Below, one piece after another: positions 12,396 through 64,000 of a stretch of DNA of 64,000 nucleotides. The notes beneath the pieces are model-generated. The model was not told the origin of the DNA and did not search any database. It saw only the letters and a list, made by a program, of their open reading frames with translations. A program made the translations under genes and the position numbers. Location of the stretch: assembly GCA_002269645.1 (NCBI GenBank), contig NIVC01001150.1, positions 62,001 to 126,000 on the forward strand, in the 5' to 3' direction. How positions within the stretch are numbered: the first letter of the stretch is position 1; each line of letters starts with the position of its first letter. This DNA comes from Macrostomum lignano. Lineage: Eukaryota.

Positions 12396-12824
12396 GCTGA
12401 GTTCAGTGAGTATCGGCTCTGCTGAGTTCAGTGAGTATCGGCTCTGCTGAGTTCAGTGAGTATCGGCTCTGCTGAGTTCAGTGAGTATCGGCTCTGCTGA
12501 GTTCAGTGAGTATCGGCTCTGCTGAGTTCAGTGAGTATCGGCTCTGCTGAGTTCAGTGAGTATCGGCTCTGCTGAGTTCAGTGAGTATCGGCTCTGCTGA
12601 GTTCAGTGAGTATCGGCTCTGCTGAGTTCAGTGAGTATCGGCTCTGCTGAGTTCAGTGAGTATCGGCTCTGCTGAGTTCAGTGAGTATCGGCTCTGCTGA
12701 GTTCAGTGAGTATCGGCTCTGCTGAGTTCAGTGAGTATCGGCTCTGCTGAGTTCAGTGAGTATCGGCTCTGCTGAGTTCAGTGAGTATCGGCTCTGCTGA
12801 GTTCAGTGCGTATCGGCTCTGCTG
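12396..12824. repeat. 25-bp minisatellite
   Basis: GCTGAGTTCAGTGAGTATCGGCTCT, about 17 near-identical copies starting ~60 bp after the F-box stop. Confidence 0.97.
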
Positions 12825-15474: not shown

Positions 15475-16332
15475 GAACCAGGGGCGCCAGCGCCGGGAAG
15501 AAACAGTGATCCCAATTTCCAATAAAAAATATCTGCTCTGGTGAAATAAATTGAATATTGAAACCTATTGAGCTGATGAAGCACTGATGCAACACACTAG
15601 TTTTCACTGGCTTAGAAGGTTGCTTTCATATAAGGTCAGTCCAGAGGCTATTAAGAGGCCCATGATTTGGGCTTGGTGGAGTTGCAGGTGGCGCTAGGTG
15701 ACTATGGGCACCCTGTTGTCCCCCCCCCGTAGTTGTACGAGTACTGTTAGAGTTTTCTGTGTAAGCCGAGGTAGATCCCTTGGCTGATCAATGAAATACT
15801 TGACTCTACCTATAAAAATCATCTTCAACTCGCATCGAGCGATTAAAGATTAATTCGTAAAGCTGTTAAAATTTTTGCAAAATTTGTTTGGGCTCAGCTC
15901 TCGAATAAAGTGATAAATTTTATTTGTCTAAATATTGAGAGCAAATTGTTCCAACCAGCTTTTTTCCTATTCAGATTTCGCCCAGGACCGGCATTGAATC
16001 AGCAGATGAGGCCAAAGTAGGCGGAGAGGCAACAAAACCAATTCTGCTGCGGAATGGCTTCAGGCCAATCCAATTAGTTTTAAAAGAGCAATTTCCTGTT
16101 GAAAAAACATTTCGTTGTTTATCCGGTCGCAAAAGCAGTTTGTCATTTTTAGCCTAAATGGACAGCAAAACGCTTAGACAATTCGTTTTCAAACGTGTCT
16201 AGCAAAGCTGCTCCATTCCTATCGTTTCGGCGTTCGGGTTCGCCGCGCTATCAATTAAAGCAGGCGGCTCTGCGGCACCGGAAGCCTGGTCGGGCTGACA
16301 GCTTTACAGCCGGGAAACAGCAGAGCATTGCC

Positions 16333-20772: not shown

Positions 20773-24608
<3,836 letters not shown>

Positions 24609-44333: not shown

Positions 44334-47300
44334 ATGGCAACCCAGCTGTCGCTTCTACTACCGCTGCTGCTGCTGGCGCCGCTGCTTGCGAGCCGGGCGG
44401 CGGGCCTCAGCCTGACGGGGGCAGCGGCCAAGACTCGTGAGTTGCTCTTGACTTGAGCAGGCAAACCTTTGTTATTAAATTTTGCAACTTTTCTAACTTG
44501 CTTTTGCTTGCTTTCACCTGTAAGCAAGGCTAAAAAAGAGTAAAAATGTTCAACATTGTGAATAATGAAAAATTCATATCAGAACACAAATAAAATTTCT
44601 GTTGAGTCACAACTACTACTGTGAGTAGTTCCTGTGATGAGGAGCGTCTCTGCTCAACGTAACCATCCCACCCGGCCCCGCAGTCGAGGGCTCGCGGCAC
44701 GCGCGCAGCAGACGCGAGACCACCAGCCCCTTCATCCCGCTGCGCCTGTTCGGCGACTCGAACCCCGAACCGCAGCCCGGCTATCCGCGCACCTCGCCGG
44801 ACTCAGAGCCGGACGAGCTGAGCCGCCACCGCACCGGCGGGGTGCCCCCGACGCCGCAGATCGTGCGAATCCGCGGCGACCTGATGAAGATGAACCCCAA
44901 CGAGGGCCGCGTCGAGGTCAACTACCACGGCGTCTGGGGGCTCGTCTGCGGCGACTACGTGCAGCAGATTGAGGCCACGCTGGTCTGCCACCAGCTGGGC
45001 TTCGAGCTGTGAGCTGGGAACAGGGCCTGCCTGGGGTGAGATTCGATAGGGTGAGATTCGATAGGGTGAGATTCGATAGGGTGAGATTCGATAGGGTGAG
45101 ATTCGATAGGGTGGGATTCGATAGGGTGAGATTCGATAGGGTGAGATTCGATAGGGTGAGATTCGATAGGGTGAGATTCGATAGGGTGAGATTCGATAGG
45201 GTGAGATTCGATAGGGTGAGATTCGATAGGGTGAGATTCGATAGGGTGAGATTCGATAGGGTGAGATTCGATAGGGTGAGATTCGATAGGGTGAGATTCG
45301 ATAGGGTGAGATTCGATAGGGTAAGATTCGATAGGGTGAGATTCGATAGGGTGAGATTCGATAGGGTGAGATTCGATAGGGTGAGATTCGATAGGGTGAG
45401 ATTCGATAGGGTGAGATTCGATAGGGTGAGATTCGATAGGGTGAGATTCGATAGGTGAGAGTAGATGGGGTGAGAGTAGAAGGGGTGAGAGTAGATGAGG
45501 TGAGAGTAGATAGGGTGAGAGTAGATAGGGTGAGAGTAGATGGGGTGAGTAGATGGGGTGAGGGTAGATAGGGTGAGAGTAGATGGGGTGAGAGTAGATA
45601 GGGTGAGAGTAGATGGGGTGAGAGTAGATGAGGTGAGAATAGATAGGGTGAGAGTAGATAGGGTGAGAGTAGATAGGGTGAGAGTAGATGGGGTGAGAGT
45701 ACATAGGGTGAGAGTAAATAGGGTGAGAGTAGATGGGGTGAGAGTACATAGGGTGAGAGTAAATAGGGTGAGAGTAGATGGGGTGAGAGCCGGTTTGTGA
45801 AGGGGAAAAAGCGGGCAGCACGAGAGTTCAAACTGAACTCGGTCCGCAGCGGAGCCAACCGGGTGTACAAGAACTCGTACTACGGCACCGGCCACTACAA
45901 GCGGCAGGACATCATCGTGGGCCACGTGCAGTGCAAGCACGACGGCGATGAGCTGACGCTGTTCGACTGCAAGCGGAAGCTGATGCCGCCCTGCGACCTG
46001 AACTCCACCACCGGGATCGAGTGCATCTACAACACCGGTGCGGCTCTGGCTGAATGCTTCCTCTGCTGTCCTTCTTGCTCACACTCCCTCTCTCTCCTCT
46101 CTCTCCCTTACCTTCCTCTTCCTCTCCTCTCTCCCTTACCTTCCTCTTCCTCTCCTCTCTCCCTTACCTTCCTCTTCCTCTCCTCTCTCCCTTTCCTTCC
46201 TCTCTCTCTCCTCTCTCCCTTTCCTTCCTCTCTCTCTCTCCTCTCTCCCTTTCCTTCCTCTCTCTCTTCTCACTCCCCTTCCTTCCTCTCTCTCTCCTCA
46301 CTCTCCCTTCCTTCCTCTCTCTCTCCTCACTCTCCCTTCCTTCCTCTCTCTCTCCTCACTCTCCCTTCCTTCCTCTCTCTCTCATCTCTCTCCCTTTCCT
46401 TCCTCTCTCTCTCCTCACTCTCCCTTTTCTTCTTCTCTCTTTTCCTCTCCCTCTTTTCTTGTACTTTCTCTTCTTTGCCTCATACACGTCACTACATCTC
46501 AATCCCTTCTGCCTTCCCCTTCCTGATCTGCTCTTACTTTTCCGTCTCTCTCTTTGCCTTTTTGTTCGTGTCACCTGAGTTCGTTCGCAATCTTCAGCTT
46601 GCAATCAAACATTGAAGACATCGCACTGTCTCCCGCTGCAGGCTGCGACTGGGGCTGGTCCAGCTTCGACGGCCTCTGCTACCGGCTGGAGACCGAGCCC
46701 AAGACTGCTGCCGAGGCCGCCGCCGCCTGCCAGGCCAAGGGTGCCAAGCTGGTGTCGGTGAACTCTTTGGAGGAGGGCAACTACATTACCAACATGCTGT
46801 ACACCAAGTTCAGATGTGAGTCAGTTCGACGTGGGTCAGTGACTGCTGATTGAGTCAGATGATTGATGATTGAGTCAGATGATTGCTGATTGAGTCAGAT
46901 GATTGCTGATTGAGTCAGATTGATTGAGTCAGATGATTGCTGATTGAGGCAGATGATTGCTGATTGAGTCAGATGATTGCTGATTGAGTCAGATGATTGC
47001 TGATTGAGTCAGATGACTGCGGATTGAGTCAGATGACTGCGGATTGAGGCAGATGACTGCGGATTGAGGCAGATGACTGCGGATTGAGTCAGATGACTGC
47101 GGATTGAGTCAGATGACTGCGGATTGAGGCAGATGACTGCGGATTGAGGCAGATGACTGCTGATTGAGGCAGATGACTGCTGATTGAGTCAGATGACTGC
47201 TGATTGAGTCAGATGACTGCGGATTGAGTCAGATGACTGCGGATTGAGGCAGATGACTGCTGATTGAGTCAGATGATTGCTGATTGAGTCAGATGATTGC

Positions 47301-50300
47301 TGATTGAGTCAGATGATTGCTGATTGAGTCAGATGATTGCTGATTGAGTCAGATGATTGCTGATTGAGTCAGATGATTGCTGATTGAGGCAGATGACTGC
47401 TGATTGAGTCAGATGATTGCTGATTGAGGCAGATGATTGCTGATTGAGTCAGATGATTGCTGATTGAGTCAGATGATTGCTGATTGAGTCAGATGATTGC
47501 TGATTGAGTCAGATGACTGCGGATTGAGTCAGATGATTGCTGATTGAGTCAGATGATTGCTGATTGAGTCAGATGACTGCGGATTGAGTCAGATGATTGC
47601 TGATTGAGTCAGATGATTGCTGATTGAGTCAGATGATTGCTGATTGAGTCAGATGATTGCTGATTGAGTCAGATGATTGCTGATTGAGTCAGATGATTGC
47701 TGATTGAGTCAGATGATTGCTGATTGAGTCAGATGATTGCTGATTGAGTCAGATGATTGCTGATTGAGTCAGATGATTGCTGATTGAGTCAGATGATTGC
47801 TGATTGAGTCAGATGACTGCTGATTGAGTCAGATGACTGCTGATTGAGGTCAGATGATTGCTGATTGAGTCAGATGATTGCTGATTGAGTCAGATGATTG
47901 CTGATTGAGTCAGATGATTGCTGATTGAGTCAGATGACTGCTGATTGAGTCAGATGATTGCTGATTGAGTCAGATGATTGCTGATTGAGTCAGATGATTG
48001 CTGATTGAGTCAGATGATTGCTGATTGAGTCAGATGATTGCTGATTGAGTCAGATGATTGCTGATTGAGTCAGATGATTGCTGATTGAGTCAGATGATTG
48101 CTGATTGAGTCAGATGATTGCTGATTGAGTCAGATGATTGCTGATTGAGTCAGATGATTGCGGATTGAGGTCAGATGATTGCGGATTGAGTCAGATGACT
48201 GCTGATTGAGTCAGATGATTGCTGATTGAGTCAGATGATTGCTGATTGAGTCAGATGACTGCTGATTGAGTCAGATGACTGATTGAGTCAGATGACTGAT
48301 GATTGAGTCAGATGATTGCTGATTGAGTCAGATGATTGCTGATTGAGTCAGATGACTGCTGATTGAGTCAGATGACTGCTGATTGAGTCAGATGATTGCT
48401 GATTGAGTCAGATGATTGCTGATTGAGTCAGATGATTGCTGATTGAGCAGATGATTGCTGATTGAGTCAGATGATTGCTGATTGAGTCAGATGATTGCTG
48501 ATTGAGTCAGATGATTGCTGATTGAGTCAGATGACTGCTGATTGAGGCAGATGATTGCTGATTGAGTCAGATGATTGCTGATTGAGTCAGATGATTGCTG
48601 ATTGAGTCAGATGACTGCTGATTGAGTCAGATGACTGCGGATTGAGTCAGATGACTGCTGATTGAGTCAGATGATTGCTGATTGAGTCAGATGATTGCTG
48701 CTTGAGTTAGACGACTGCTGATTAAGTCAGATGACTGCGGATTGAGTCAGATGACTGCGGATTGAGGCAGATGACTGATTGAGTCAGATGATTGCTGATT
48801 GAGTCAGATGATTGCTGATTGAGTCAGATGATTGCTGATTGAGTCAGATGATTGCTGATTGAGTCAGATGATTGCTGATTGAGTCAGATGATTGCTGATT
48901 GAGTCAGATGATTGCTGATTGAGTCAGATGATTGCTGATTGAGTCAGATGATTGCTGATTGAGTCAGATGATTGCTGATTGAGTCAGATGATTGCTGATT
49001 GAGTCAGATGATTGCTGATTGAGTCAGATGATTGCTGATTGAGTCAGATGATTGCTGATTGAGTCAGATGATTGCTGATTGAGTCAGATGATTGCTGATT
49101 GAGTCAGATGATTGCTGATTGAGTCAGATGATTGCTGATTGAGCAGATGATTGCTGATTGAGTCAGATGATTGCTGATTGAGTCAGATGATTGCTGATTG
49201 AGTCAGATGATTGCGGATTGAGTCAGATGATTGCTGATTGAGTCAGATGATTGCTGATTGAGTCAGATGATTGCTGATTGAGTCAGATGATTGCTGATTG
49301 AGTCAGATGATTGCTGATTGAGTCAGATGATTGCTGATTGAGTCAGATGATTGCTGATTGAGTCAGATGATTGCTGATTGAGTCGCATGATTGATGATTG
49401 AGGCAGATGATTGCTGATTGAGCAGATGATTGCTGATTGAGTCAGATGATTGCTGATTGAGTCAGATGATTGCTGATTGAGTCAGATGATTGCTGATTGA
49501 GTCAGATGATTGCTGATTGAGTCAGATGATTGCTGATTGAGTCAGATGATTGCTGATTGAGTCAGATGATTGCTGATTGAGTCAGATGATTGCTGATTGA
49601 GTCAGATGATTGCTGATTGAGTCAGATGATTGCTGATTGAGTCAGATGATTGCTGATTGAGTCAGATGATTGCGGATTGAGTCAGATGATTGCTGATTGA
49701 GTCAGATGATTGCGGATTGAGTCAGATGATTGCGGATTGAGGCAGATGATTGCTGATTGAGTCAGATGATTGCTGATTGAGTCAGATGATTGCTGATTGA
49801 GTCAGATGATTGCTGATTGAGTCAGATGATTGCTGATTGAGTCAGATGATTGCGGATTGAGTCAGATGATTGCGGATTGAGTCAGATGATTGCTGATTGA
49901 GTCAGATGATTGCGGATTGAGTCAGATGATTGCTGATTGAGTCAGATGATTGCTGATTGAGTCAGATGATTGCTGATTGAGTCAGATGATTGCTGATTGA
50001 GTCAGATGATTGCTGATTGAGTCAGATGATTGCTGATTGAGTCAGATGATTGCTGATTGAGTCAGATGATTGCTGATTGAGTCAGATGATTGCTGATTGA
50101 GTCAGATGATTGCTGATTGAGTCAGATGACTGCGGATTGAGGCAGATGACTGATTGAGTCAGATGATTGCTGATTGAGGCAGATGATTGCTGATTGAGTC
50201 AGATGATTGCTGATTGAGTCAGATGATTGCTGATTGAGTCAGATGATTGCTGATTGAGTCAGATGATTGCTGATTGAGTCAGATGATTGCTGATTGAGTC

Positions 50301-53300
50301 AGATGATTGCTGATTGAGTCAGATGATTGCGGATTGAGTCAGATGATTGCTGATTGAGTCAGATGATTGCTGATTGAGTCAGATGATTGCTGATTGAGTC
50401 AGATGATTGCTGATTGAGTCAGATGACTGCGGATTGAGTCAGATGATTGCTGATTGAGTCAGATGACTGCGGATTGAGTCAGATGACTGCTGATTGAGTC
50501 AGATGATTGCTGATTGAGTCAGATGATTGCTGATTGAGTCAGATGATTGCTGATTGAGTCAGATGACTGCTGATTGAGTCAGATGACTGATTGAGTCGAT
50601 GACTGATGATTGAGTCAGATGACTGCTGATTGAGTCAGATGATTGCTGATTGAGTCAGATGATTGATGGTTGAGTCAGATGGCTGCTGATTGAGTCAGAT
50701 GATTGCTGATTGAGTCAGATGATTGCTGATTGAGGCAGATGATTGCTGATTGAGTCAGATGATTGCTGATTGAGTCAGATGATTGCGGATTGAGTCAGAT
50801 GATTGCTGATTGAGTCAGATGACTGCTGATTGAGTCAGATGATTGCTGATTGAGTCAGATGATTGCTGATTGAGTCAGATGACTGCGGATTGAGGCAGAT
50901 GATTGCGGATTGAGTCAGATGACTGCTGATTGAGTCAGATGATTGCTGATTGAGTCAGATGATTGCTGATTGAGGCAGATGACTGCTGATTGAGTCAGAT
51001 GACTGATTGAGTCGCATGACTGATGATTGAGTCAGATGACTGCTGATTGAGTCAGATGATTGCTGATTGAGTCAGATGATTGATGGTTGAGTCAGATGAC
51101 TGCTGATTGAGTCAGATGATTGCTGATTGAGTCAGATGATTGCTGATTGAGTCAGATGATTGCTGATTGAGGCAGATGATTGCTGATTGAGTCAGATGAT
51201 TGCTGATTGAGTCAGATGATTGCTGATTGAGTCAGATGATTGCTGATTGAGTCAGATGACTGCTGATTGAGGCAGATGACTGCTGATTGAGTCAGATGAT
51301 TGCTGATTGAGTCAGATGATTGCTGCTTGAGTCAGACGACTGCTGATTAAGTCAGATGACTGCGGATTGAGTCAGATGACTGCTGATTGAGGCAGATGAT
51401 TGCTGATTGAGTAAGATGATTGCTCCTTGAGTTAGACGACTGCTGATTAAGTCAGATGACTGCGGATTGAGTCAGATGACTGCGGATTGAGGCAGATGAC
51501 TGATTGAGTCAGATGATTGCTGATTGAGTCAGATGATTGCGGATTGAGTCAGATGATTGCTGATTGAGTCGCATGATTGATGATTGAGGCAGATGATTGC
51601 TGATTGAGTCAGATGATTGCTGATTGAGTCAGATGATTGCTGATTGAGTCGCATGATTGATGATTGAGGCAGATGATTGCGGATTGAGGCAGATGATTGC
51701 TGATTGAGTCAGATGATTGCTGATTGAGTCAGATGATTGCTGATTGAGTCAGATGATTGCTGATTGAGTCAGATGATTGCTGATTGAGTCAGATGATTGC
51801 TGATTGAGTCAGATGATTGCTGATTGAGTCAGATGACTGCGGATTGAGTCAGATGACTGCGGATTGAGGCAGATGATTGCTGATTGAGTCAGATGATTGC
51901 TGATTGAGTCAGATGATTGCTGATTAAGTCAGATGATTGCGGATTGAGGCAGATGATTGCTGATTGAGTCAGATGATTGCTGATTGAGTCAGATGATTGC
52001 TGATTGAGTCAGATGATTGCTGATTGAGTCAGATGATTGCTGATTGAGTCGCATGATTGATGATTGAGGCAGATGATTGCTGATTGAGTCAGATGATTGC
52101 TGATTGAGTCGCATGATTGATGATTGAGGCAGATGATTGCGGATTGAGGCAGATGATTGCTGATTGAGTCAGATGATTGCTGATTGAGTCAGATGATTGC
52201 TGATTGAGTCAGATGATTGCTGATTGAGTCAGATGATTGCTGATTGAGTCAGATGATTGCTGATTGAGTCAGATGATTGCTGATTGAGTCAGATGACTGC
52301 GGATTGAGTCAGATGACTGCGGATTGAGGCAGATGATTGCTGATTGAGTCAGATGATTGCTGATTGAGTCAGATGATTGCTGATTAAGTCAGATGATTGC
52401 GGATTGAGGCAGATGATTGCTGATTGAGTCAGATGATTGCGGATTGAGTCAGATGACTGCGGATTGAGGCAGATGATTGCTGATTGAGTCAGATGATTGC
52501 TGATTGAGTCAGATGATTGCTGATTAAGTCAGATGATTGCGGATTGAGTCAGATGATTGCTGATTGAGTCAGATGATTGCGGATTGAGTCAGATGATTGC
52601 GGATTGAGTCAGATGATTGCTGATTGAGGCAGATGATTGCTGATTGAGTCAGATGATTGCTGATTGAGTCAGATGATTGCTGATTGAGTCAGATGATTGC
52701 TGATTGAGTCAGATGATTGCTGATTGAGTCAGATGATTGCTGATTGAGTCAGATGATTGCTGCTTGAGTCAGATGATTGCTGATTGAGTCAGATGATTGC
52801 TGATTGAGTCAGATGACTGCGGATTGAGTCAGATGACTGCGGATTGAGGCAGATGACTGCGGATTGAGGCAGATGACTGATTGAGTCAGATGATTGCTGA
52901 TTGAGGCAGATGATTGCTGATTGAGTCAGATGATTGCTGATTGAGTCAGATGATTGCTGATTGAGTCAGATGATTGCTGATTGAGTCAGATGATTGCTGA
53001 TTGAGTCAGATGATTGCTGATTGAGTCAGATGATTGCTGATTGAGTCAGATGATTGCGGATTGAGTCAGATGATTGCTGATTGAGTCAGATGACTGCTGA
53101 TTGAGTCAGATGATTGCTGATTGAGTCAGATGATTGCTGATTGAGTCAGATGACTGCGGATTGAGGCAGATGATTGCTGATTGAGTCAGATGACTGCGGA
53201 TTGAGTCAGATGACTGCTGATTGAGTCAGATGATTGCTGATTGAGTCAGATGATTGCTGATTGAGTCAGATGATTGCTGATTGAGGCAGATGACTGCTGA

Positions 53301-56300
53301 TTGAGTCAGATGACTGATTGAGTCGCATGACTGATGATTGAGTCAGATGACTGCTGATTGAGTCAGATGATTGCTGATTGAGTCAGATGATTGATGGTTG
53401 AGTCAGATGGCTGCTGATTGAGTCAGATGATTGCTGATTGAGTCAGATGATTGCTGATTGAGTCAGATGATTGCTGATTGAGGCAGATGATTGCTGATTG
53501 AGTCAGATGATTGCTGATTGAGTCAGATGATTGCTGATTGAGTCAGATGATTGCTGATTGAGGCAGATGACTGCTGATTGAGGCAGATGACTGCTGATTG
53601 AGTCAGATGATTGCTGATTGAGTCAGATGATTGCTGCTTGAGTCAGACGACTGCTGATTAAGTCAGATGACTGCGGATTGAGTCAGATGACTGCTGATTG
53701 AGGCAGATGATTGCTGATTGAGTAAGATGATTGCTCCTTGAGTCAGACGACTGCTGATTAAGTCAGATGACTGCGGATTGAGTCAGATGACTGCGGATTG
53801 AGGCAGATGACTGATTGAGTCAGATGATTGCTGATTGAGTCAGATGATTGCGGATTGAGTCAGATGATTGCTGATTGAGTCGCATGATTGATGATTGAGT
53901 CAGATGACTGCTGCTTGAGTCAGATGATTGCTGATTGAGGCAGATGATTGCGGATTGAGGCAGATGATTGCTGATTGAGTCAGATGATTGCTGATTGAGT
54001 CAGATGATTGCTGATTGAGTCAGATGATTGCTGATTGAGTCAGATGATTGCTGATTGAGTCAGATGATTGCGGATTGAGTCAGATGATTGCTGATTGAGT
54101 CGCATGATTGATGATTGAGGCAGATGATTGCTGATTGAGTCAGATGATTGCTGATTGAGTCGCATGATTGATGATTGAGGCAGATGATTGCGGATTGAGG
54201 CAGATGATTGCTGATTGAGTCAGATGATTGCGGATTGAGTCAGATGATTGCTGATTGAGTCAGATGATTGCTGATTGAGTCAGATGATTGCGGATTGAGT
54301 CAGATGATTGCTGATTGAGTCAGATGATTGCGGATTGAGGCAGATGATTGCTGATTGAGTCAGATGATTGCTGATTGAGTCAGATGATTGCGGATTGAGT
54401 CAGATGATTGCTGATTGAGTCGCATGATTGATGATTGCGGATTGAGTCAGATGATTGCTGATTGAGGCAGATGATTGCTGATTGAGTCAGATGATTGCTG
54501 ATTGTGATAGATGCTTGTTGACTTGCAAAATGAAAGAGGTGCAAAATGTCAGAGGTGCAAAATGTCAGACTTTCAAAATGTCAGACTATAGGCCCGCAAG
54601 CTGCCTACCGCTCCACCCGCAGCACTCAACGCGGTGTGGACAGGAGGCCAGTTCGGCTCCTTCAGGGACGTCGGCTCGCAGTACACGTCCTGGACCTTCG
54701 TGGACACGATTCACATGGCGCGGCAGCCGCTGTGGTTCCCGGGGTTCGAGCCCGGCACCGATCAGAGGCCGGCGGGGGATCCACAGCAGCGCTCCTGCAT
54801 CGCCATGTCGAAGCTGTTCCAGAATCCGCGCAGCAGACGGGATGTAGACGTGAACTACTTCTGGTGGGACAACATCAGCTGCAAGACCCGCCTGCCCTTC
54901 GTCTGCCAGAAGCTGGCGGTGGCCAGCGCGGACTGCTACGAGGGCATCGGCACCGAATACCGGGGACTCGCCGCCAGGTGGAGACAATGAGGATCCCCGC
55001 TTTGATGAGGATCCCCGCTTTGATGAGGATCCCTGCTTTGATGAGGATCCCCGCTTTGATGAGGATCCCCGCTTTGATGAGGATCCCCGCTTTGATGAGG
55101 ATCCCTGCTTTGATGAGGATCCCCGCTTTGATGAGGATCCCCGCTTTGATAAGGATCCCCGCTTTGATGAGGATCCCCGCTTTGATGAGGATCCCCGCTT
55201 TGATGAGGATCCCCGCTTTGATGAGGATCCCCGCTTTGATGAGGATCCCCGCTTTGATGAGGATCTCCGCTTTGATGAGGATCCTCGCTTTGATGAGGAT
55301 CCCCGCTTTGATGAGGATCCCCGCTTTGATGAGGATCTCCGCTTTGATGAGGATCCTCGCTTTGATGAGGATCCTCGCTTTGATGAGGATCCCCGCTTTA
55401 ATGAGGATCCAGCCAGTGCACACAGATCTCAGGCTACAGCACACAGATCTCAGGCTAAAACACACAGATCTCAGGCTACAGCACACAGATCTCAGGCTAC
55501 AGCACACAGATCTCAGGCTACAGCACACAGATCTGAGGCTACAGCACACAGATCTCAGGCTAAAACACACAGATCTCAGGCTACAGCACACAGATCTCAG
55601 GCTACAGCACACAGATCTCAGGATAAAACACACAGATCTCAGGCTACAGCACACAGATCTCAGGCTACAGCACACAGATCTCAGGCTACAGCACACAGAT
55701 CTCAGGCTACAGCACACAGATCTCAGGCTACAGCACACAGATCTCAGGCTACAGCACACAGATCTCAGGCTACAGCCAGTGCACACAGCGGCCTCCCTCG
55801 CCCCCAGAACTGACAAAGGCACACCCTGCCAGCCGTGGGGCGACAACCAGTTGATCAATCCGAGCACCTACCCGAATGCGGGTCTCAGCGGCCACGGCCT
55901 CTGCCGCAACCCGGACGGAGACGCGAAGCCCTGGTGCTGGGTGGACAACAAGAACAACGTCTTTGGCTACTGCAGCCTCAGGCAGTGCTCGGATGAGCTG
56001 CCGCAGCCGCAGGAGGGACCGCCGATGACGCCGGGGTTTGGCCACGAGAAGTGCGACCGGCATGAGGACTTTTTCTGCCCGAGCATGCTGAGCTACCGGC
56101 CCGTGTGAGTGAGGCTGTGTGAGTGAGGCTGTGTGAGTGAGGCTGTGTGAGTGAGGCTGTGTGAGTGAGGCTGTGTGAGTGAGGCTGTGTGAGTGAGGCT
56201 GTGTGAGTGAGGCTGTGTGAGTGAGGCTGTGTGAGTGAGGCTGTGTGAGTGAGGCTGTGTGAGTGAGGCTGTGTGAGTGAGGCTGTGTGAGTGAGGCTGT

Positions 56301-59300
56301 GTGAGTGAGGCTGTGTGAGTGAGACTGTGTGAGTGAGGCTGTGTGAGTGAGACTGTGTGAGTGAGACTGTGTGAGTGAGGCTGTGTGAGTGAGGCTGTGT
56401 GAGTGAGGCTGTGTGAGTGAGGCTGTGTGAGTGAGGCTGTGTGAGTGAGACTGTGTGAGTGAGGCTGTGTGAGTGAGGCTGTGTGAGTGAGGCTGTGTGA
56501 GTGAGGCTGTGTGAGTGAGACTGTGTGAGTGAGGCTGTGTGAGTGAGGCTGTGTGAGTGAGGCTGTGTGAGTGAGACTGTGTGAGTGAGGCTGTGTGAGT
56601 GAGGCTGTGTGAGTGAGGCTGTGTGAGTGAGACTGTGTGAGTGAGGCTGTGTGAGTGAGGCTGGAACATGCTTGTCTCGGACGCCCTGCCCGCAGCTGCG
56701 TAGTGGAGCGCCAGGTCTGCGACGGGTTCGTCGACTGCGTTGGCAAGGAGGACGAGGACGAGGCCTTCTGCAGGAACTGTGAGTCGCCAAGCTGAGTCTT
56801 CTATGACGTAAACCTGATTCGTCGGCAAGAACTCGCAAGTGCACACCGCTATCGCATTGCAGACACCTGCACGAGCGACCACTTCTACTGCAGGAAATTT
56901 CACAAGTACAGCTCAGAATTGCTTCCAGTTTAATGAGGCCCGCAGCACTGCAATGCCAAGACTGAAATTTCTTGCCTGGATCCCGCAGGTGCATCTCAAT
57001 GGACCAGGTGTGCGACGGGCTTGCCGACTGCGACCTCGGCGACGACGAGACTGAGGAGGCTTGCATGAGCGTCAAGGCCCGTGAGTCTGTGCTGACTGAG
57101 TCTGTGCTGGCTGAGTCTGTGCTGACTGAGTCTGTCCTGACTGAGTCTGTCCTGACTGAGTCTGTGCTGACTGAGTCTGTGCTGACTGAGTCTGTGCTGG
57201 CTGAGTCTGTGCTGACTGAGTCTGATTGAGGTTCGCTCTGAGAGAAGCGTGCACTCGAGTATTTTTTAATATAAATAAGTCGATGCGCGACACTGAGATA
57301 TTGTGCGCAGGCACGCACTCACAGACACGCTCACACGGGGTGTACAGCGGCCCCGACTCTCTAGTCAGCAGGCACGCACTCACAGACACGCTCACACAGG
57401 GTGTACATCGGCCCCGACTCTCTAGTCAGCAGGCATGTACACCCTGTGTGCCTTGGGGGTTAGTCCTTGAGTGTGACTCCCACGGCTCGTGACGCAAGAG
57501 TCAGACGCGTTGACAGCTGAGCTGCTCCGCCCCCCCCCCCCCGGAGAGAAGCCCCGAGTCTTCGAATCTTCAGCTGGCTGAGATTCCCGAATGCCCGGTG
57601 AATTGCAGAGGCCGAGGCGGAGCTGGCAAACGAGTTCCAGATGACGGCTGGCATCGACGAGTCGAGCGTCCCCGCCGACGCCAAGCTGGCGATCTACTAC
57701 AGGAAGACTCTGGTGCAGGTGAGCGGTGGCAGGGAGCTGCTTCTAAACTGAAATCCCGTGAGCAGGATGCGAGCAACCCCTGGCATGGAATTTCAGTGTG
57801 CCAAGCACTGCGACCGCCTGGAGCAGTTCTTCTGCAAGAGCTTCATCTACTACCGGACCGGCGAGCAGCGCTTCCAGTCCAAGTGCTTCCTGCTGGGAAG
57901 CCGAATAACAGACCCGGCCAGTAAGGCCGACCCCAGCATCGAGGCCAAGTACTACGAGATCCCTGAGAGTGAGAGCGGGCTGGGGCTTGGGACTCGTCCG
58001 TTGGATATGGCTCAAAACTATGGTGCAGTCACGGCTGTCAGCGATCGATTGAAAAGAGATCTCAGGCAGTGACAGTTTATTGTTAGCTGGATCTCAGGCA
58101 GTGACAGTTTATTGTTAGCTGGATCTCAGGCAGTGACAGTTTATTGTTAGCTGGATCTCAGTCAGTGACAGTTTATTGTTAGCTGGATCTCAGTCAGTGA
58201 CTGTTTATTGTTAGCTGGATCTCAGGCAGTGACAGTTTATTGTTAGCTGGATCTCAGTCAGTGACAGTTTATTGTTAGCTGGATCTCAGTCAGTGACAGT
58301 TTATTGTTAGCTGGATCTCAGGCAGTGACAGTTTATTGTTAGCTGGATCTCAGGCAGTGACAGTTTATTGTTAGCTGGATCTCAGGCAGTGGCAGTTTAT
58401 TTTTAGCTGGATCTCAGGCAGTGACAGTTTATTGTTAGCTGGATCTCAGGCAGTGGCAGTTTATTGTTAGCTGGATCTCAGTCAGTGACAGTTTATTGTT
58501 AGCTGGATCTCAGTCAGTGACTGTTTATTGTTAGCTGGATCTCAGGCAGTGACAGTTTATTGTTAGCTGGATCTCAGTCAGTGACAGTTTATTGTTAGCT
58601 GGATCTCAGTCAGTGACAGTTTATTGTTAGCTGGATCTCAGGCAGTGACAGTTTATTGTTAGCTGGATCTCAGGCAGTGACAGTTTATTGTTAGCTGGAT
58701 CTCAGGCAGTGGCAGTTTATTTTTAGCTGGATCACAGGCACTGACAGTTTATTATTAGCTAGATCACTGGGGCATGGGTTTAAGAATCTAGATAACCGGG
58801 TTTAAGAATCTCATTGAGACGCCAGCAATCTCAGAGTCTCAATCTCAGTAAACCGCCTCCTCAACCCCAGCTTGCAATGACGCTGACGACTTCCTCTGCA
58901 ACAACAGTCATTGCGTGAAAAAATCGCAGGCCTGCAACGGCTTTGACGATTGCGGAGACTTCTCTGACGAGATCAACAGCCGCTGCGGGAAGGGTGAGAT
59001 TTGAGATCTTGGTTTTTTATTGCCGCCAGAACTCGGTCTCTCCCAGTCTGAGATGCCGCCAGAGCTCGGTCTCTCCCAGTCTGAGATGCCGCCAGAGCTC
59101 GGTCTCTCCCAGTCTGAGATGCCGCCAGAACTCGGTCTCTCCCAGTCTGAGATGCCGCCAGAGCTCGGTCTCTCCCAGTCTGAGATGCCGCCAGAGCTCG
59201 GTCTCTCCCAGTCTGAGATGCCGCTAGAGCTCGGTCTCTCCCAGTCTGAGATGCCGCCAGAACTCGGTCTCTCCCAGTCTGAGATGCCGCTAGAGCTCGG

Positions 59301-62300
59301 TCTCTCCCAGTCTGAGATGCCGCCAGAGCTCGGTCTCTCCCAGTCTGAGATGCCGCCAGAACTCGGTCTCTCCCAGTCTGAGATGCCGCCAGAGCTCGGT
59401 CTCTCCCAGTCTGAGATGCCGCCAGAGCTCGGTCTCTCCCAGTCTGAGATGCCGCCAGAGCTCGGTCTCTCCCAGTCTGAGATGCCGCCAGAACTCGGTC
59501 TCTCCCAGTCTGAGATGCCGCCAGAGATCGGTCTCTCCCAGTCTGAGATGCCGTCAGAACTCGGTCTCTCCCAGTCTGAGATGCCGCCAGAACTCGGTCT
59601 CTCCCAGTCTGAGATGCCGCCAGAGCTCGGTCTCTCCCAGTCTGAGATGCCGCCAGAACTCGGTCTCTCCCAGTCTGAGATGCCGCCAGAGATCGGTCTC
59701 TCCCAGTCTGAGATGCCGCCAGAGCTCGGTCTCTCCCAGTCTGAGATGCCGCCAGAGCTCGGTCTCTCCCAGTCTGAGATGCCGCCAGAACTCGGTCTCT
59801 CCCAGTCTGAGATGCCGCCAGAGCTCGGTCTCTCCCAGTCTGAGATGCCGCCAGAGCTCGGTCTCTCCCAGTCTGAGATGCCGCCAGAACTCGGTCTCTC
59901 CCAGTCTGAGATGCCGCCAGAACTCGGTCTCTCCCAGTCTGAGATGCCGCCAGAACTCGGTCTCTCCCAGTCTGAGATGCCGCCAGAGCTCGGTCTCTCC
60001 CAGTCTGAGATGCCGCCAGAACTCGGTCTCTCCCAGTCTGAGATGCCGCCAGAGCTCGGTCTCTCCCAGTCTGAGATGCCGCCAGAGCTCGGTCTCTCCC
60101 AGTCTGAGATGCCGCCAGAACTCGGTCTCTCCCAGTCTGAGATGCCGCCAGAACTCGGTCTCTCCCAGTCTGAGATGCCGCCAGAGATCGGTCTCTCCCA
60201 GTCTGAGATGCCGCCAGAGCTCGGTCTCTCCCAGTCTGAGATGCCGCCAGAGCTCGGTCTCTCCCAGTCTGAGATGCCGCCAGAGCTCGGTTTCTCCCAG
60301 TCTGAGATGCCGCCAGAGCTCGGTCTCTCCCAGTCTGAGATGCCGCCAGAACTCGGTCTCTCCCAGTCTGAGATGCCGCCAGAGCTCGGTCTCTCCCAGT
60401 CTGAGATGCCGCCAGAACTCGGTCTCTCCCAGTCTGAGATGCCGCCAGAACTCGGTCTCTCCCAGTCTGAGATGCCGCCAGAACCCGTTCCCATCGAATC
60501 TCTGGGCCAGCAGACCCGGCCAAAAACTACGAGCTGGTGCTGAGTGGCGGCTCGGACAACCACGAGGGCCGCATCGAGATTCGCCTGTTCAACCAGCGCG
60601 GCCTCGTCTGCGATGATGGGCTGAACGCTGCCATGGCCGACGTGATCTGCCAGCAGCTGGGCTACCCCGGCCACGAGCGCTTCATCTTGAATGCCTGGCA
60701 GCAGTTCGGTCGCGGAACCGGCGGCTTCATCCTCAGTGGTGTCCACTGCGGCCCCGGAGCCAAGAACATCACGGACTGCGCCCACCGGCCGTGGGGCGAC
60801 AGCGGCGCCTGCAGCGTCAAGAATGTGGCCGGGCTCATCTGCTTGATAGACAGGCGTGAGTGCTTGTAAGGCAGGCCAACATACCTGGTTATGGATCTTT
60901 CGAGAGGCGCCCTGAAGCAATATTTGCAATATTTCAAGTCAGCTCGTAGCAATCGCAATCTCTGAATTGATTTTTCAGCCTGCAGCATGCACGAGGTCCG
61001 CTGCGACAGTCGCTGCTTTCCTTTGTCGAAAATGTGCGACGGTGTCCCCGACTGCTCGGACGGCTGGGACGAGACCGAGTGCGATATCCTGAGTGAGTAC
61101 CAGGGGGACTGACGGACATCCTGAGTGAGTGTCAGGGGCTGCAGGGACATCCTGAGTGAATTTCAAGGGCTGCAAGGACATCCTGAGTGAGTGTCAAGGG
61201 CTGCAGGGACATCCTGAGTGAGTGTCAAGGGCTGCAGGGACATCCTGAGTGAATGTCAAGGGCTGCAAGGACATCCTGAGTGAGTTTCAAAGGCTGCAAG
61301 GACATCCTGAGTGAGTGTCAAGGGCTGCAGGGACATCCTGAGTGAGTGGCAGGGGCTGCAGGTACAGGTGTCCTGAGTGATGAGTGGCAGGGGCTGCAGG
61401 TACAGGTGTCCTGAGTGATGAGTGGCAGGGGCTGCAGGTACAGGTGTCCTGAGTGATGAGTGGCAGGGGCTGCAGGTACAGGTGTCCTGAGTGATGAGTG
61501 GCAGGGGCTGCAGGTACAGGTGTCCTGAGTGATGAGTGGCAGGGGCTGCAGGTACAGGTGTCCTGAGTGATGAGTGGCAGGGGCTGCAGGTACAGGTGTC
61601 CTGAGTGATGAGTGGCAGGGGCTGCAGGTACAGGTGTCCTGAGTGATGAGTGGCAGGGGCTGCAGGTACAGGTGTCCTGAGTGATGAGTGGCAGGGGCTG
61701 CAGGTACAGGTGTCCTGAGTGATGAGTGGCAGGGGCTGCAGGTACAGGTGTCCTGAGTGATGAGTGGCAGGGGCTGCAGGTACAGGTGTCCTGAGTGATG
61801 AGTGGCAGGGGCTGCAGGTGTCCTGAGTTGCTGCAGGCCTAATTGCACAGCCCGCATTTCCCCCGCGCCGCAGACGTGACTCTGTCGCACAACAGAACGG
61901 CGGGTGTCGTGGAGATCTCCCGCGGCGGCATCCAGGGCGTCGTGTGCGACGATCACTTCTCGGACGAGGAGGTGAAGGTCGTCTGCCGCCACCTGGGCAT
62001 CCCAGGCAGGGGGGCGCTGGCACAGCGCGGGCAATTCAGCACTCCAGCTGGCGTGGTGATGTGGCTGCAGGACATTCGCTGCGAGGGCACCGAGGCCTCG
62101 CTGTTCGACTGCAGCCTCAGAGACTGGGGCGAGTCCACCTGCTCGATAGATGAGGCAGTGCAGCTGTTGTGCGGCCTGCCTGAGGTCACCGACCCGGAAA
62201 CCACCCAGGCGCCGCAGACGGGTGAGCGTTGCTTAAGTCTGTTACCCGGCTCTGCTTATCTGGGCTTTGCCTTTTAGTTTCTTGTGACCGTTTGGAGCTA

Positions 62301-63627
62301 TAGACTTTTCTCGCATCTCAGCTTAAAAGAGTGATAAATTATAAGCATCCTAGAGAAAATAATGCGCAGTCTTCCTGTTTGCTATCTATCAGCACTTCAT
62401 CGTACTTAATTCCTACATAGTAAACACCTGCCTTCTTGAGCCTACAAATCCGCTGTGTGCTTTTCATGACAGGGCATAACAGATCCTGACAGACCCTAGC
62501 AGAACCCTCCAGGCTCGCCTCCCCGCTGTATCTACGAACCACCAGCAGCCTAGCTCGTAGACCCCGGCAGGCACTGACACACCCTGACAGACATCACCCC
62601 TCACACTCGCTGCAGACTACTCAGAGATATGCGGCAAGCGCCTGGCCCCCTACAGCTTCTACCGCATCGGTGGCGGCCGCAACTCTGGCATCACGGAGGT
62701 GCCATGGCAGGTCGCCATCAGGAAGAAGGTGATCCGGCCCGCCGGACTGCGCAAGGACATCAAGCTGCCCAGCAGCTCTGCCTGGTGCGGCGGCACCATC
62801 TTGTCCGATCGCTGGATTCTGTCCGCCGCCCACTGCTTCCCCTACGCCAAGTGAGTGCCGCCTCACCCACCAATCTGCACATATCCCACTCCGCACCTAA
62901 AAACTCCGCACCACCCAATCGCCCTCAGCATGCCAAAGTCCGCCTTTGTGGTGCGCGCAGGCGACTGGAACAACACGGCGCCCGATCAGTACGAGCGCGA
63001 GTTCGATGTGGACCTGCTGATCCAGCACGAGCGGTACACGGGCCCGCCGGCCTACGACTTCGACATCAGCCTGCTGCGCATCAAGCCGGACAGCCGCGGC
63101 TACCTGGAGTTCAACGCGGGCGTCCAGCCCGCCTGCCTGCCTCGGCAGAACCAGCCGATGAACTATGATCCAACCTCCAAGTGCCTCATCAGCGGCTGGG
63201 GATCCAGGGGAGGTAAGTTGTAGGAGGAGAAGAGACGAAGGAAAGATGGCAACAGCTGCTGGATTGAATCGGTCCTTGGGAAATCATGCACAGCAAGGAC
63301 CACCCAATACGAGAACTCAGCAATCCGCAATCAAGTTACACGGTGGGATGTGGCTCGGGTTTCCCAGCGCTGAACACAAAGCTCGTCCTTGCAGGCTTTG
63401 ACTATCCGGAGGCCCTGCAGATGGCCGAGGTGCCGCTGATTCGCCGGGAGGTCTGCGACCGCATGTACGAGTTCGAGAACATCACGGAGCGAATGTTCTG
63501 CGCCGGCTACAAAGAGGGCGGCATCGACGCCTGCCAGGGCGACTCTGGCGGCCCGCTGGTCTGCAAAATCGTCGACCCCGGACCACCCGCTGAGGCCGGC
63601 GGCGCTGCCGCGAAGGGGGACCGCTGA
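44334..63627 (+). CDS. Modular trypsin-like serine protease (Tequila/GRAAL/SVH-1-like): signal peptide-SRCR-C-type lectin-Kringle-LDLa-LDLa-PAN-LDLa-SRCR-LDLa-SRCR-trypsin; at least 18 exons, C-terminus unresolved
   Basis: Exons 44334..44436, 44684..45008, 45850..46037, 46642..46815, 54623..54977, 55808..56104, 56696..56778, 56863..56905, 56989..57080, 57609..57718, 57797..57968, 58871..58993, 60514..60855, 60979..61092, 61874..62221, 62616..62850, 62929..63212, 63395..~63627. All phases are consistent (about 1200 aa). Motifs EGRVEV..GLVC (SRCR), WDNISC..RLPFVC (CTL), [15 protein letters not shown] (kringle), CDG..DC...DE (LDLa), [24 protein letters not shown] (catalytic triad, S1 Asp). Confidence 0.93.
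45036..45788. repeat. 15-bp minisatellite (two subtypes) in protease intron 2
   Basis: GTGAGATTCGATAGG (about 28 copies) switching to GTGAGAGTAGAT(A/G)GG (about 22 copies). Confidence 0.97.
46084..46450. repeat. CT-rich polypyrimidine repeat in protease intron 3
   Basis: CTCTCTCCTCACTCTCCCTTCCTTC-type degenerate units. Confidence 0.9.
46843..54504. repeat. 20-bp minisatellite, about 380 copies (7.7 kb), filling protease intron 4 and splitting the C-type lectin domain
   Basis: TGATTGAGTCAGATGATTGC with variants (GAGGCA, GACTGC, GGATTG). Confidence 0.99.
54987..55788. repeat. Two abutting minisatellites (18-bp then 21-bp) in protease intron 5, inside the kringle
   Basis: ATGAGGATCCCCGCTTTG about 23 copies (54987-55409), then CACACAGATCTCAGGCTACAG about 17 copies (55416-55786). 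Confidence 0.97.
56103..56662. repeat. 14-bp minisatellite made of the exon 6/intron 6 donor junction
   Basis: GT|GTGAGTGAGGCT, about 40 copies, beginning at the last 2 exon bases. Confidence 0.97.
57082..57228. repeat. 15-bp minisatellite starting at the intron 9 donor
   Basis: TGAGTCTGTGCTGAC, about 10 copies, immediately from GTGAGTCTG at 57081. Confidence 0.93.
58059..58767. repeat. 32-bp minisatellite in protease intron 11
   Basis: GATCTCAG(G/T)CAGTGACAGTTTATTGTTAGCTG, about 22 copies. Confidence 0.97.
59032..60483. repeat. 33-bp minisatellite in protease intron 12
   Basis: GCCGCCAGAACTCGGTCTCTCCCAGTCTGAGAT, about 44 copies. Confidence 0.98.
61086..61828. repeat. 31-bp grading into 38-bp minisatellite in protease intron 14
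   Basis: GACATCCTGAGTGAGTGTCAAGGGCTGCAGG then CAGGTACAGGTGTCCTGAGTGATGAGTGGCAGGGGCTG. Confidence 0.96.
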
Positions 63628-63829
63628 GGAGTGGGGAGGGTGAGTAGGGGGCCGCTGAGGAGTGGGGAGGGTGAGTAGGGGGCCGCTGAGGAGTGGGGAG
63701 GGTGAGTAGGGGGCCGCTGAGGAGTGGGGAGGGTGAGTAGGGGGCCGCTGAGGAGTGGGGAGGGTGAGTAGGGGGCCGCTGAGGAGTGGGAGGGTGAGTA
63801 GGGGGCCGCTGAGGAGTGGGGAGGGTGAG
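63614..63829. repeat. 31-bp minisatellite overlapping the 3' end of protease exon 18
   Basis: AGGGGGCCGCTGAGGAGTGGGGAGGGTGAGT, about 7 copies, each with a GAGG|GTGAGT donor. Confidence 0.95.
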
Positions 63830-64000
63830 TCAGCAGCCTGACAACCCCTGCAAGCACCTGAATAACTTTACTATAACTATGAAGGCAGGTTAACGTTGCA
63901 CTCGCAGCCTTGGAGGTCGAATACTGCTCAAATCACGAAAGTGTATAATATCTAATATATAGCCGTGGAGCCAGTATCCCCGCTTCATCGAAAATACGAG

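What the first reader, a model, noticed from the sequence alone, without database searches (positions are those of the whole stretch)
45009..63829. Splice-junction-seeded minisatellites: each intron grows its own array out of its splice site
Seen: 10 of 18 protease introns (counting the one after exon 18) hold arrays with unrelated units, and most begin at or copy the junction. Intron 2 has AGG|GTGAGA (about 50 copies); intron 4 has CAGATG plus TGAGTCAG from CAGAT|GTGAGTCAG; intron 6 has GT|GTGAGT (about 40); intron 9 has TGAGTCTG; intron 12 has TCTCTCCCAG| (about 44); intron 14 has ATCCTGA|GTGAGT; the last has GAGG|GTGAGT. Phox2 intron 2 does the same at its acceptor. In every case checked, use of a decoy gives a stop within a few codons. 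Inference: a mutational process targeted to exon-intron boundaries (for example transcription/R-loop-associated slippage or repair), or the tandem-duplication route of intron growth. This would require a spliceosome that ignores dozens of perfect decoys, or exploits them for NMD-coupled dosage control and protease-less secreted isoforms. I know of no named system for this.
Basis: partly seen in the sequence, partly recalled or inferred. Interest (0 to 1): 0.85.

Follow-up and report, generated by a model that had tools for sequence, protein, structure and literature searches.

The report
Splice-junction-spanning minisatellites in a flatworm gene
In a repeat-rich flatworm genome, a few hypervariable intron minisatellites began as duplications straddling a splice site and so carry dozens of decoy splice sites, a real but already described phenomenon ("mirage" minisatellites), not a new splice-site-targeted mutation process.

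Summary
The window is Macrostomum lignano DNA. The "protease" is a neurotrypsin-like gene (BOX15_Mlig020209g1).

**Confirmed**
- 10 of its 18 introns hold unrelated tandem arrays.
- Four arrays physically touch or span the donor: introns 6, 9, 14 and 18. Three of them copy the donor.
- One array in the Phox2 homeobox intron spans the acceptor.
- Three near-identical copies of the locus carry the same arrays with very different copy numbers, so these are real hypervariable VNTRs.

**Not confirmed**
- The arrays of introns 2 and 12 do not start at or copy their junction. Intron 4 is borderline.
- Tandem arrays fill 32-69% of the window, including intergenic DNA.
- With arrays collapsed to one unit, the array-bearing introns are only about 50-460 nt long (one is 933 nt). 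Random seeding then predicts 3.9 donor-touching arrays among 31 in three paralogues; 4 are seen, all in the window gene.
- Splice-like motifs in units are no commoner on the sense strand than on the antisense strand or in shuffles.

**Precedent**
- The phenomenon is named: "mirages" in amphioxus.
- Human examples are F7, IFI6, CBS, LMNB2 and PDGF.

**Unexplained**
- All arrays of this one gene lie on the donor side of their introns.

Verdict: a new member of a known kind, of modest interest.

The parts
44334..64000 (+). Neurotrypsin-like multidomain serine protease gene (SRCR, C-type lectin, kringle, LDLa, SRCR, LDLa, SRCR, trypsin), exons 1-18. Exon 19 lies just past the window end.
   Evidence: Hand model reads through. 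100% match to P0001 BOX15_Mlig020209g1. Exact spliced map. Pfam domains. Exon 19 is at L001 29850-29974.
45034..45788 (+). Intron 2 array, 15 nt x 50.5 (GGGTGAGATTCGATA). It starts 25 nt after the real donor GCT|GTGAGC (45008/45009). The units are donor-like decoys but not a copy of the junction.
   Evidence: In L002, 19 of 20 decoys score at or above the authentic donor. Host-junction similarity is not above non-host.
46087..46452 (+). Intron 3 array, CT-rich, 28/58-nt unit, 48 nt from the donor.
46835..54504 (+). Intron 4 array, 20 nt x 385 (7.7 kb). It starts 18 nt after the donor CAGAT|GTGAGTCAG and shares the 8-mer TGAGTCAG with it. No GT, so no decoys. It may be a degenerate junction unit.
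   Evidence: rank 0.03. It has only about 41 copies in the two other gene copies.
54987..55776 (+). Intron 5: two unrelated arrays (18 nt x 23.6 starting at +9; 21 nt x 17.1).
56103..56663 (+). Intron 6 donor-spanning array, 14 nt x 40.1. The first unit is the last 2 exon bases plus GTGAGTGAGGCT (donor at 56104/56105).
   Evidence: Frame requires the donor CCCGT|GTGAGT.. 28 and 13 copies in L002 and L003. Decoy use gives a stop after 1 codon.
57082..57224 (+). Intron 9 array, 15 nt x 9.5, starting at intron position +2 (donor at 57080/57081). Later units read CTGAGT, so they are not decoys.
58058..58765 (+). Intron 11 array, 32 nt x 22.1, mid-intron (89 nt from the donor).
59021..60482 (+). 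Intron 12 array, 33 nt x 44.3, with acceptor-like TCTCTCCCAG. It ends 29 nt before the real acceptor (60513/60514) and is not a copy of it.
   Evidence: (acceptor score 4.7 on both strands).
61086..61819 (+). Intron 14 donor-spanning array. The 31-nt unit is the last 7 exon bases ATCCTGA plus GTGAGT... (x9; donor at 61092/61093). A derived 38-nt unit follows (x12.6).
   Evidence: In copy L003 the very junction unit has been re-duplicated three times.
63614..63830 (+). Intron 18 donor-spanning array, 31 nt x 7. The first unit is the last ~24-26 bases of exon 18 plus GTGAGT (donor at 63639/63640, by homology with the intact copy).
   Evidence: The window copy has one G fewer than L002, which puts TGA in frame at 63625-63627.
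23893..24387 (+). Phox2 homeobox intron, acceptor-spanning array. The 45-nt unit is the pyrimidine tract, CAG and the first 16-17 nt of the last exon (GTGTGGTTCCAGAACC), x10. The real acceptor is at 24371/24372.
   Evidence: Homeodomain Pfam hit when spliced at the last copy. 90-94% identity to Phox2A/B homeodomains. Upstream copies read [10 protein letters not shown] then a stop.
21949..22969 (+). (AGAT)x256 microsatellite starting 8 nt after the Phox2 homeobox-intron donor (21940/21941).
12396..12824 (+). Control: 25 nt x 17 array with a strong donor-like CA|GTGAGTA in every unit. It lies downstream of the stop codon of the F-box/LRR gene, so it is not in an intron.
13856..15475 (+). Control: 45 nt x 36 array with acceptor-like CTCTCCTGCAG|G in every unit. 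It lies between genes.

Best explanation
These are ordinary hypervariable minisatellites (VNTRs) of an exceptionally minisatellite-rich genome, Macrostomum lignano.

- **Birth and growth.** Arrays arise all over the locus, in introns and between genes, from a small tandem duplication. They then grow and shrink by slippage or unequal exchange.
- **Why some span a junction.** Without their arrays the array-bearing introns are mostly about 50-460 nt long. A sizeable fraction of founder duplications of 14-45 nt therefore straddle a splice junction by chance.
- **Why those persist.** A duplication that includes exon tail plus donor is harmless as long as the exon-adjacent (most upstream) donor keeps being used. 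The copies become intron. The same holds for the most downstream copy of an acceptor-spanning array. Such arrays persist as 'mirage' minisatellites carrying identical decoy splice sites.
- **Safety net.** An in-frame stop in the first unit makes any mis-spliced product a likely NMD target.

**Shown:** the arrays; four donor-touching arrays and one acceptor-spanning array; copy-number variation among three gene copies; intron positions older than the arrays; a gene model and a sister-species transcript that match use of the outermost site.

**Inferred:** the growth mechanism, and that the decoys are silent in vivo.
For: - **Organism and gene:**
- **Arrays are everywhere.** They cover 32% of window 1-44.3 kb, 69% of the protease gene, 45% of the mostly intergenic 24.7-44.3 kb, and 22-55% of five related loci. 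The published genome reports an unusually high fraction of simple and tandem repeats (PMC5730564).
- **Real and hypervariable.** Three colinear copies of the locus have exons 98-100% identical. Intron lengths of the array-free introns 1, 7, 8, 10, 13, 16 and 17 agree to within 3 nt. Intron 15, also array-free, differs by a 100-nt non-tandem indel. Every array-bearing intron differs in copy number; intron 4 is 7807, 963 and 954 nt. In one copy the junction unit itself is freshly re-duplicated.
- **Introns predate the arrays.** Paralogues at 42-50% protein identity share exon lengths of 188 and 43 nt at the matching places. P0004 also shares 174, 355, 297, 123, 114 and 125 nt.
- **Null model.** With uniform seeding and junction overlap allowed, 31 arrays in 58 introns give 3.9 expected donor-touching arrays; 4 are observed (P = 0.57). 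The paralogues alone show 0 against 2.2 expected.
- **No motif enrichment.** Among units not touching a donor, donor-like motifs are 5 sense, 6 antisense, 5.5 in shuffles.
- **Splice-like units outside introns:**
- **Outermost site is the authentic one.** The sister-species transcript protein is colinear across introns 2-17, with no insertion at introns 2, 6, 9, 14. The homeodomain is complete only with the last acceptor copy.
- **Precedents.** In human F7 IVS7 only the most upstream of identical donors is used. IFI6, CBS, LMNB2 and PDGF are similar cases (PMC1557585). Amphioxus 'mirages' occur at both boundary types, vary in length and do not disturb splicing (PMC3087553).
Against: - This differs from the paralogues (Fisher 2e-4).
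- **Dependence on the null.** The conclusion depends on accepting junction-overlapping duplications as neutral.
- **Acceptor deficit.** Acceptor-touching arrays are under-represented in the three paralogues: 0 against about 4 expected (P = 0.01). Seeding plus survival is therefore not simply uniform.
- **Small sample.** It is one gene family plus two other introns.
- **No RNA reads.** Silence of the decoys is inferred.
Confidence: 0.75

Rival explanations
1. A mutational process aimed at exon-intron boundaries (for example R-loop-, transcription- or spliceosome-associated slippage) seeds minisatellites preferentially at 5' splice sites.
For: - In the window gene all 10 primary arrays lie on the donor side, and 4 touch the donor (P = 1e-4 and 0.08).
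- Units there are G-rich on the sense strand (mean GC skew +0.23), as R-loop models would like.
- Host-donor similarity is slightly above non-host (mean rank 0.33, KS p = 0.04).
- The inside-only null gives P = 2e-4.
Against: - Paralogues with the same intron positions have 19 arrays, none touching a donor, and a skew towards the acceptor side.
- Pooled, observed equals expected: 4 against 3.9.
- Arrays are just as dense in intergenic DNA.
- There is no sense-strand excess of donor-like units.
- Most of the host-similarity signal comes from arrays that overlap the scoring window.
- The ASC-channel, Sec61 alpha and H1 gene region (1-9 kb) is almost array-free.
Confidence: 0.12
2. The decoy arrays are functional: regulated use of decoy sites gives NMD-coupled dosage control or truncated secreted isoforms.
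For: - Every decoy in introns 2, 6, 14 and 18 leads to a stop within 1-6 codons.
- Human IFI6 and CBS do use the first one or two pseudo-sites (PMC1557585).
Against: - Copy number differs 2- to 9-fold between near-identical gene copies, as expected for neutral VNTRs.
- The paralogues lack such arrays.
- The quick stop is one read-through path per intron and is expected for any intron read-through.
- There is no conservation evidence and there are no RNA data.
Confidence: 0.05
3. The introns themselves were created by tandem duplications containing AG|GT (Rogers-type intron gain), and the arrays are the remnants.
For: Junction-spanning duplications are the raw material proposed for this route (PMC3087553).
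Against: Intron positions and exon lengths are shared with paralogues of 42-50% identity whose introns hold different arrays or none. The introns are therefore far older than the arrays.
Confidence: 0.02
4. Assembly artefact: the arrays are mis-assembled long-read noise.
For: The window copy has a homopolymer-length difference (G5 against G6) that may be a consensus error.
Against: The same arrays sit at the same positions, with the same unit sequences, on three separate contigs with different copy numbers and variant units.
Confidence: 0.02

Closest known systems
'Mirage' minisatellites of amphioxus (Adh3, Canestro et al. 2002; globins BflGb6 and BflGb9, Ebner et al. 2010, PMC3087553)
   Same: - Minisatellite-like tandem duplications whose units span an exon-intron boundary.
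- They occur at either the 5' or the 3' boundary.
- Many units keep AG/GT signals.
- Length is unstable between haplotypes.
- Regular splicing is reported as undisturbed.
- They are proposed as raw material for exon and intron change.
   Different: - The organism is a flatworm, not a cephalochordate.
- Units here are shorter (14-45 nt against 10-160 nt) and copy numbers are higher (up to 40 junction copies).
- Several occur in a single gene.
- Splicing and somatic instability were not tested here.
Human F7 intron 7 VNTR and similar cases (IFI6/6-16 intron 2, CBS intron 13, LMNB2, PDGF intron 4; Borensztajn et al. 2006, PMC1557585)
   Same: - The first monomer consists of the last few exon bases plus the start of the intron, so the authentic donor is followed by identical pseudo-sites.
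- Repeat number is polymorphic.
- The most upstream site is the one used.
   Different: - In F7 the silence of the pseudo-sites and the 5'-to-3' scanning rule were shown by mutagenesis. Here use of the first site rests on the deposited gene model and on colinearity with a sister-species transcript.
- Intron 2 here has decoys that score higher than the authentic donor and are not copies of it.
Generic intronic and intergenic minisatellites (VNTRs) of the M. lignano genome (Wudarski et al. 2017, PMC5730564)
   Same: Unit sizes are the same, identity is high, and they are abundant both in introns and between genes. The paper gives simple and tandem repeats as 15% of the assembly.
   Different: The paper does not describe junction-spanning arrays. 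A full-text search for Macrostomum plus minisatellite found nothing relevant.

Membership tests
Mirage / junction-spanning minisatellite | Head-to-tail array of at least 3 units of roughly 10-160 bp | tested here: met
   TRF: 14 nt x 40, 15 nt x 9.5, 31 nt x 9, 31 nt x 7, 45 nt x 10, with 90-98% matches.
Mirage / junction-spanning minisatellite | The terminal unit spans the exon-intron boundary, holding exon bases plus the splice signal | tested here: met
   Met for intron 6 (2 exon nt), intron 14 (7 nt), intron 18 (~24-26 nt) and the Phox2 acceptor (16-17 nt). Intron 9 only abuts the boundary (+2). Introns 2, 3, 5, 11 and 12 do not span it. Intron 4 is uncertain.
Mirage / junction-spanning minisatellite | Length polymorphism between alleles or copies | tested here: met
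   Copy numbers in the three locus copies: intron 6, 40/28/13; intron 14, 9/10/5.5; intron 18, 7/8/7; intron 9, 9.5/7.5/6.5.
Mirage / junction-spanning minisatellite | Normal splicing retained: the exon-adjacent site is used | tested here: inconclusive
   The deposited models (P0001, P0015) use the first donor. The sister-species transcript protein is colinear there. The homeodomain is complete only with the last acceptor. No RNA reads were examined.
F7-type silent 5' pseudo-site array | Pseudo-sites identical in sequence to the authentic donor | tested here: met
   Intron 18: 7 decoys in L002 score the same as the authentic site. Intron 6: identical from -2 to +12. Intron 14: the core is identical.
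F7-type silent 5' pseudo-site array | Only the most upstream site is used, shown on transcripts or by mutagenesis | not testable with these tools
   It needs RNA-seq, Iso-Seq or minigenes.
Rogers-type intron gain by tandem duplication | The intron is absent from relatives and flanked by duplicated exon sequence | tested here: not met
   The same intron positions occur in paralogues P0004 and P0006.

The most novel reading that the evidence does not exclude
In M. lignano, minisatellite birth is truly biased towards 5' splice sites in some genes. The window gene shows 10 of 10 arrays on the donor side, unlike its paralogues. Such a bias would reflect a transcription-, R-loop- or splicing-coupled mutational process.

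In addition, junction-spanning arrays would feed back on gene structure:
- Exon 18 carries a 20-residue extension whose last 24 nt are the first array unit.
- The Phox2 acceptor units are AG|GT sites that could be removed stepwise, as in recursive splicing.
Probability: 0.12. Interest if true: 0.6.

Novelty: new member of a known kind. Interest (0 to 1): 0.3.

Why it matters
The finding does not reveal a new mutational system.

It does show that a tractable flatworm model carries many natural arrays of identical decoy splice sites, sometimes stronger than the authentic site. There are up to 50 in one intron, at both donors and an acceptor, and copy numbers differ between gene copies. Transgenesis is established in this species (PMC5730564).

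That makes it a ready-made system for testing how the spliceosome picks the exon-adjacent site among identical competitors, beyond the few human cases. It could also show how minisatellite turnover inflates introns and occasionally changes exon ends.

It also matters for annotation. The Phox2 gene with the acceptor array has no deposited protein in the searched collection. One protease copy is truncated at the array.

Tried and rejected
1. **Host against non-host junction similarity of units.** The excess is only weak, and most of it is explained by arrays that overlap the scoring window. Only intron 4 (an 8-mer) and L004 introns 2 and 5 stand out.
2. **PWM scan for donor- and acceptor-like motifs, sense against antisense against shuffles.** There is no sense-specific enrichment. 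Acceptor-like scores are raised on both strands, which is a composition effect.
3. **A pre-expansion state among the three gene copies.** None was found. All copies already carry all the arrays.
4. **The 100-nt length difference in array-free intron 15.** It is an indel flanked by a 10-nt direct repeat, not a nascent tandem duplication.
5. **Replication-strand asymmetry as the cause of the donor-side skew.** Flanking intergenic arrays have mixed GC skew, so this is not supported.
6. **A deposited M. lignano Phox2 protein, to obtain other copies of the acceptor array.** None is in the collection. The search only confirmed Phox2 identity.
7. **Literature search for Macrostomum plus minisatellite.** Nothing relevant was found.
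8. **Assembly artefact and intron gain.** Both were considered and rejected.

Full report
**What the window is.** A protein search with my hand-built coding sequence returned a 100% match to Macrostomum lignano BOX15_Mlig020209g1 (P0001), a neurotrypsin/PRSS12-like protease. Its Pfam domains are SRCR, C-type lectin, kringle, LDLa and trypsin. An exact spliced mapping reproduces my 18 exons. Exon 19 lies about 110 nt past the window end. Other genes in the window:
- an ASC-type channel;
- Sec61 alpha, on the minus strand;
- a linker histone;
- an F-box/LRR gene;
- a Phox2 homeobox gene;
- a bHLH gene.

**The observation.** TRF finds about 40 distinct arrays across the whole window.
- Four arrays touch the donor.
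  - Intron 6: the unit is the last 2 exon bases plus GTGAGTGAGGCT, x40.
  - Intron 14: the unit is the last 7 exon bases plus GTGAGT..., x9, followed by a derived 38-nt unit x12.6.
  - Intron 18: the unit is the last ~24-26 exon bases plus GTGAGT, x7.
  - Intron 9: the array starts at +2, and later copies lack the G, so there are no decoys.
- Intron 4 (385 copies, 7.7 kb) starts at +18 and shares an 8-mer with the junction. It may be a degenerate junction unit.
- Intron 2 starts at +25 after a different donor.
- Intron 12 ends 29 nt before an unrelated acceptor.
- In Phox2, the 45-nt array 23893-24387 repeats the pyrimidine tract, the CAG and the first 16-17 nt of the last homeobox exon ten times. 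Only the last copy continues into RRAKFRK. Upstream copies read [10 protein letters not shown] and then a stop.
- Decoy donors (at least 5 per intron) exist only in introns 2, 6, 14 and 18. Use of any of them gives a stop in 1-6 codons. That is a single read-through path per intron.

**Are the arrays real?** The same assembly holds two more copies of the locus, L002 and L003. They are colinear over at least 30 kb, at 95-99% identity in the unique parts, and their exons are 98-100% identical to the window's.
- Intron lengths of the array-free introns 1, 7, 8, 10, 13, 16 and 17 agree to within 3 nt in all three copies. Intron 15, also array-free, differs by a 100-nt non-tandem indel.
- Every array-bearing intron differs in copy number. 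Intron 4 is 7807, 963 and 954 nt. Intron 6 has 40, 28 and 13 units.
- In L003 the very junction unit of intron 14 (ATCCTGA|GTGAGTACC...) has been duplicated again.

These are therefore true hypervariable VNTRs, and duplication that includes the exon tail is ongoing.

**Is there junction targeting?** I compared the window gene with two paralogues, P0004 (50% identity) and P0006 (42%). Their intron positions are conserved: exon lengths of 188 and 43 nt recur in both, and P0004 also shares 174, 355, 297, 123, 114 and 125 nt. The introns are thus much older than the arrays.

| Test | Result |
|---|---|
| Arrays in the paralogues | 19, none touching a donor; nearest is +3 |
| Length of array-bearing introns, arrays collapsed to one unit | about 50-460 nt (one of 933 nt) |
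| Donor-touching arrays, uniform seeding with junction overlap allowed, 31 arrays | 3.9 expected, 4 observed (P = 0.57) |
| Same, window gene alone | 1.75 expected, 4 observed (P = 0.08) |
| Same, paralogues alone | 2.2 expected, 0 observed |
| Donor-touching arrays, seeds forbidden to overlap exons | 0.56 expected (P = 2e-4) |
| Acceptor-touching arrays in the three genes | about 4 expected, 0 observed (P = 0.01) |
| Donor-like motifs in units not touching a donor | 5 sense, 6 antisense, 5.5 in shuffles |

- The exon-excluding null is not appropriate, because overlapping duplications demonstrably occur and are tolerated.
- The acceptor deficit suggests that upstream acceptor copies are less well tolerated than downstream donor copies.
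- Arrays with perfect donor-like or acceptor-like units also lie outside introns (12396-12824 and 13856-15475).
- Array coverage is 45% in the mostly intergenic 24.7-44.3 kb.

**What remains odd.** Within the window gene all 10 primary arrays lie in the donor half of the collapsed intron (P = 1e-4). This differs from the paralogues (Fisher 2e-4).

**Which site is used?** The deposited models use the exon-adjacent donor. A transcript contig of a related species (P0002, Logan run SRR30276804, intronless) encodes a protein that is colinear across introns 2-17, with no insertion at introns 2, 6, 9 or 14. At intron 18 the M. lignano protein has a 20-residue extension just before the junction. The Phox2 homeodomain is complete, and 90-94% identical to Phox2A/B, only with the last acceptor copy. 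No RNA reads were available.

**Comparison with what is known.**
- Minisatellites whose first monomer spans the exon-intron boundary are described for human F7 intron 7. Only the most upstream of identical donors is used, and mutagenesis showed a 5'-to-3' scanning rule.
- Similar human cases are IFI6, CBS, LMNB2 and PDGF (PMC1557585).
- In amphioxus they are named 'mirages' (Adh3; globins). They occur at both boundaries, are unstable in length, leave splicing undisturbed, and have been proposed as a route to new exon-intron structure (PMC3087553).
- The M. lignano genome paper reports an unusually high fraction of simple and tandem repeats but does not mention junction arrays (PMC5730564). A search for Macrostomum plus minisatellite found nothing relevant.

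**Verdict.** This is a genuine and tidy set of junction-spanning minisatellites in a flatworm. It is best explained by neutral, genome-wide minisatellite birth in short introns plus tolerance of junction-overlapping duplications. It is a new member of a known kind, and interest is modest (0.3).

Noticed in passing
window 63606-63627 (L001 29348-29369) against L002 21068-21095: The window copy of the protease has five G where copy L002 has six (aaggggg[g]acc). This shifts the frame and puts TGA in frame at 63625-63627, so the deposited protein P0001 ends there. L002 reads on into exon 19. L003 has the same sequence as the window. It is either a real truncating allele or a homopolymer consensus error.
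   Followed up: partly
window about 63575-63639 (end of exon 18): Exon 18 encodes a 20-residue extension ([20 protein letters not shown]) that is absent from a sister-species transcript and from a paralogue. The last 24 nt of the exon are the first unit of the intron 18 array (P < 0.0005). A further 9-mer, CCGCTGAGG, recurs 35 nt upstream (P about 0.015). Array units may have been exonised by a downstream shift of the donor.
   Followed up: partly
window 23893-24387: Each Phox2 acceptor-array unit reads ...CCCCAG|GTGTGG, an acceptor directly followed by a donor-like GT (donor PWM 5.9, above the threshold). That is the layout of recursive splice sites. Stepwise removal is conceivable but untested. 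No M. lignano Phox2 protein exists in the searched collection.
   Followed up: no
window 25934-26255 and 26907-27102: Two 22-nt-unit arrays about 650 nt apart are inverted relative to each other. They are about 70% complementary over up to 121 nt, giving a potential long imperfect hairpin made of minisatellites.
   Followed up: partly
window 12396-12824 and 13856-15475: These are arrays between genes with perfect splice-like units: CA|GTGAGTA x17 just after the F-box gene stop, and CTCTCCTGCAG|G x36 upstream of a secreted Cys-rich gene that starts near 16430. The species uses spliced-leader trans-splicing (PMC5730564), so the second could offer many trans-splice acceptors. Not examined.
   Followed up: no
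window 62222-62615 (intron 15) against L002 and L003: A 100-nt length difference between gene copies is an indel flanked by the 10-nt direct repeat CCTGACAGAC. This is a microhomology-type event, not a tandem duplication.
   Followed up: yes
window 1-9000: The stretch holding the ASC channel, Sec61 alpha (minus strand) and linker-histone genes has only two tiny TRF hits, against 32-69% array coverage elsewhere. Minisatellite load is very uneven between neighbouring genes.
   Followed up: no
L001, L004, L005 introns: Arrays of the window gene sit on the donor side and are G-rich on the sense strand (mean skew +0.23). Those of paralogue P0004 sit mostly 13-41 nt upstream of acceptors and are C-rich (-0.18). 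The heterogeneity between paralogues (Fisher 2e-4) is unexplained.
   Followed up: partly
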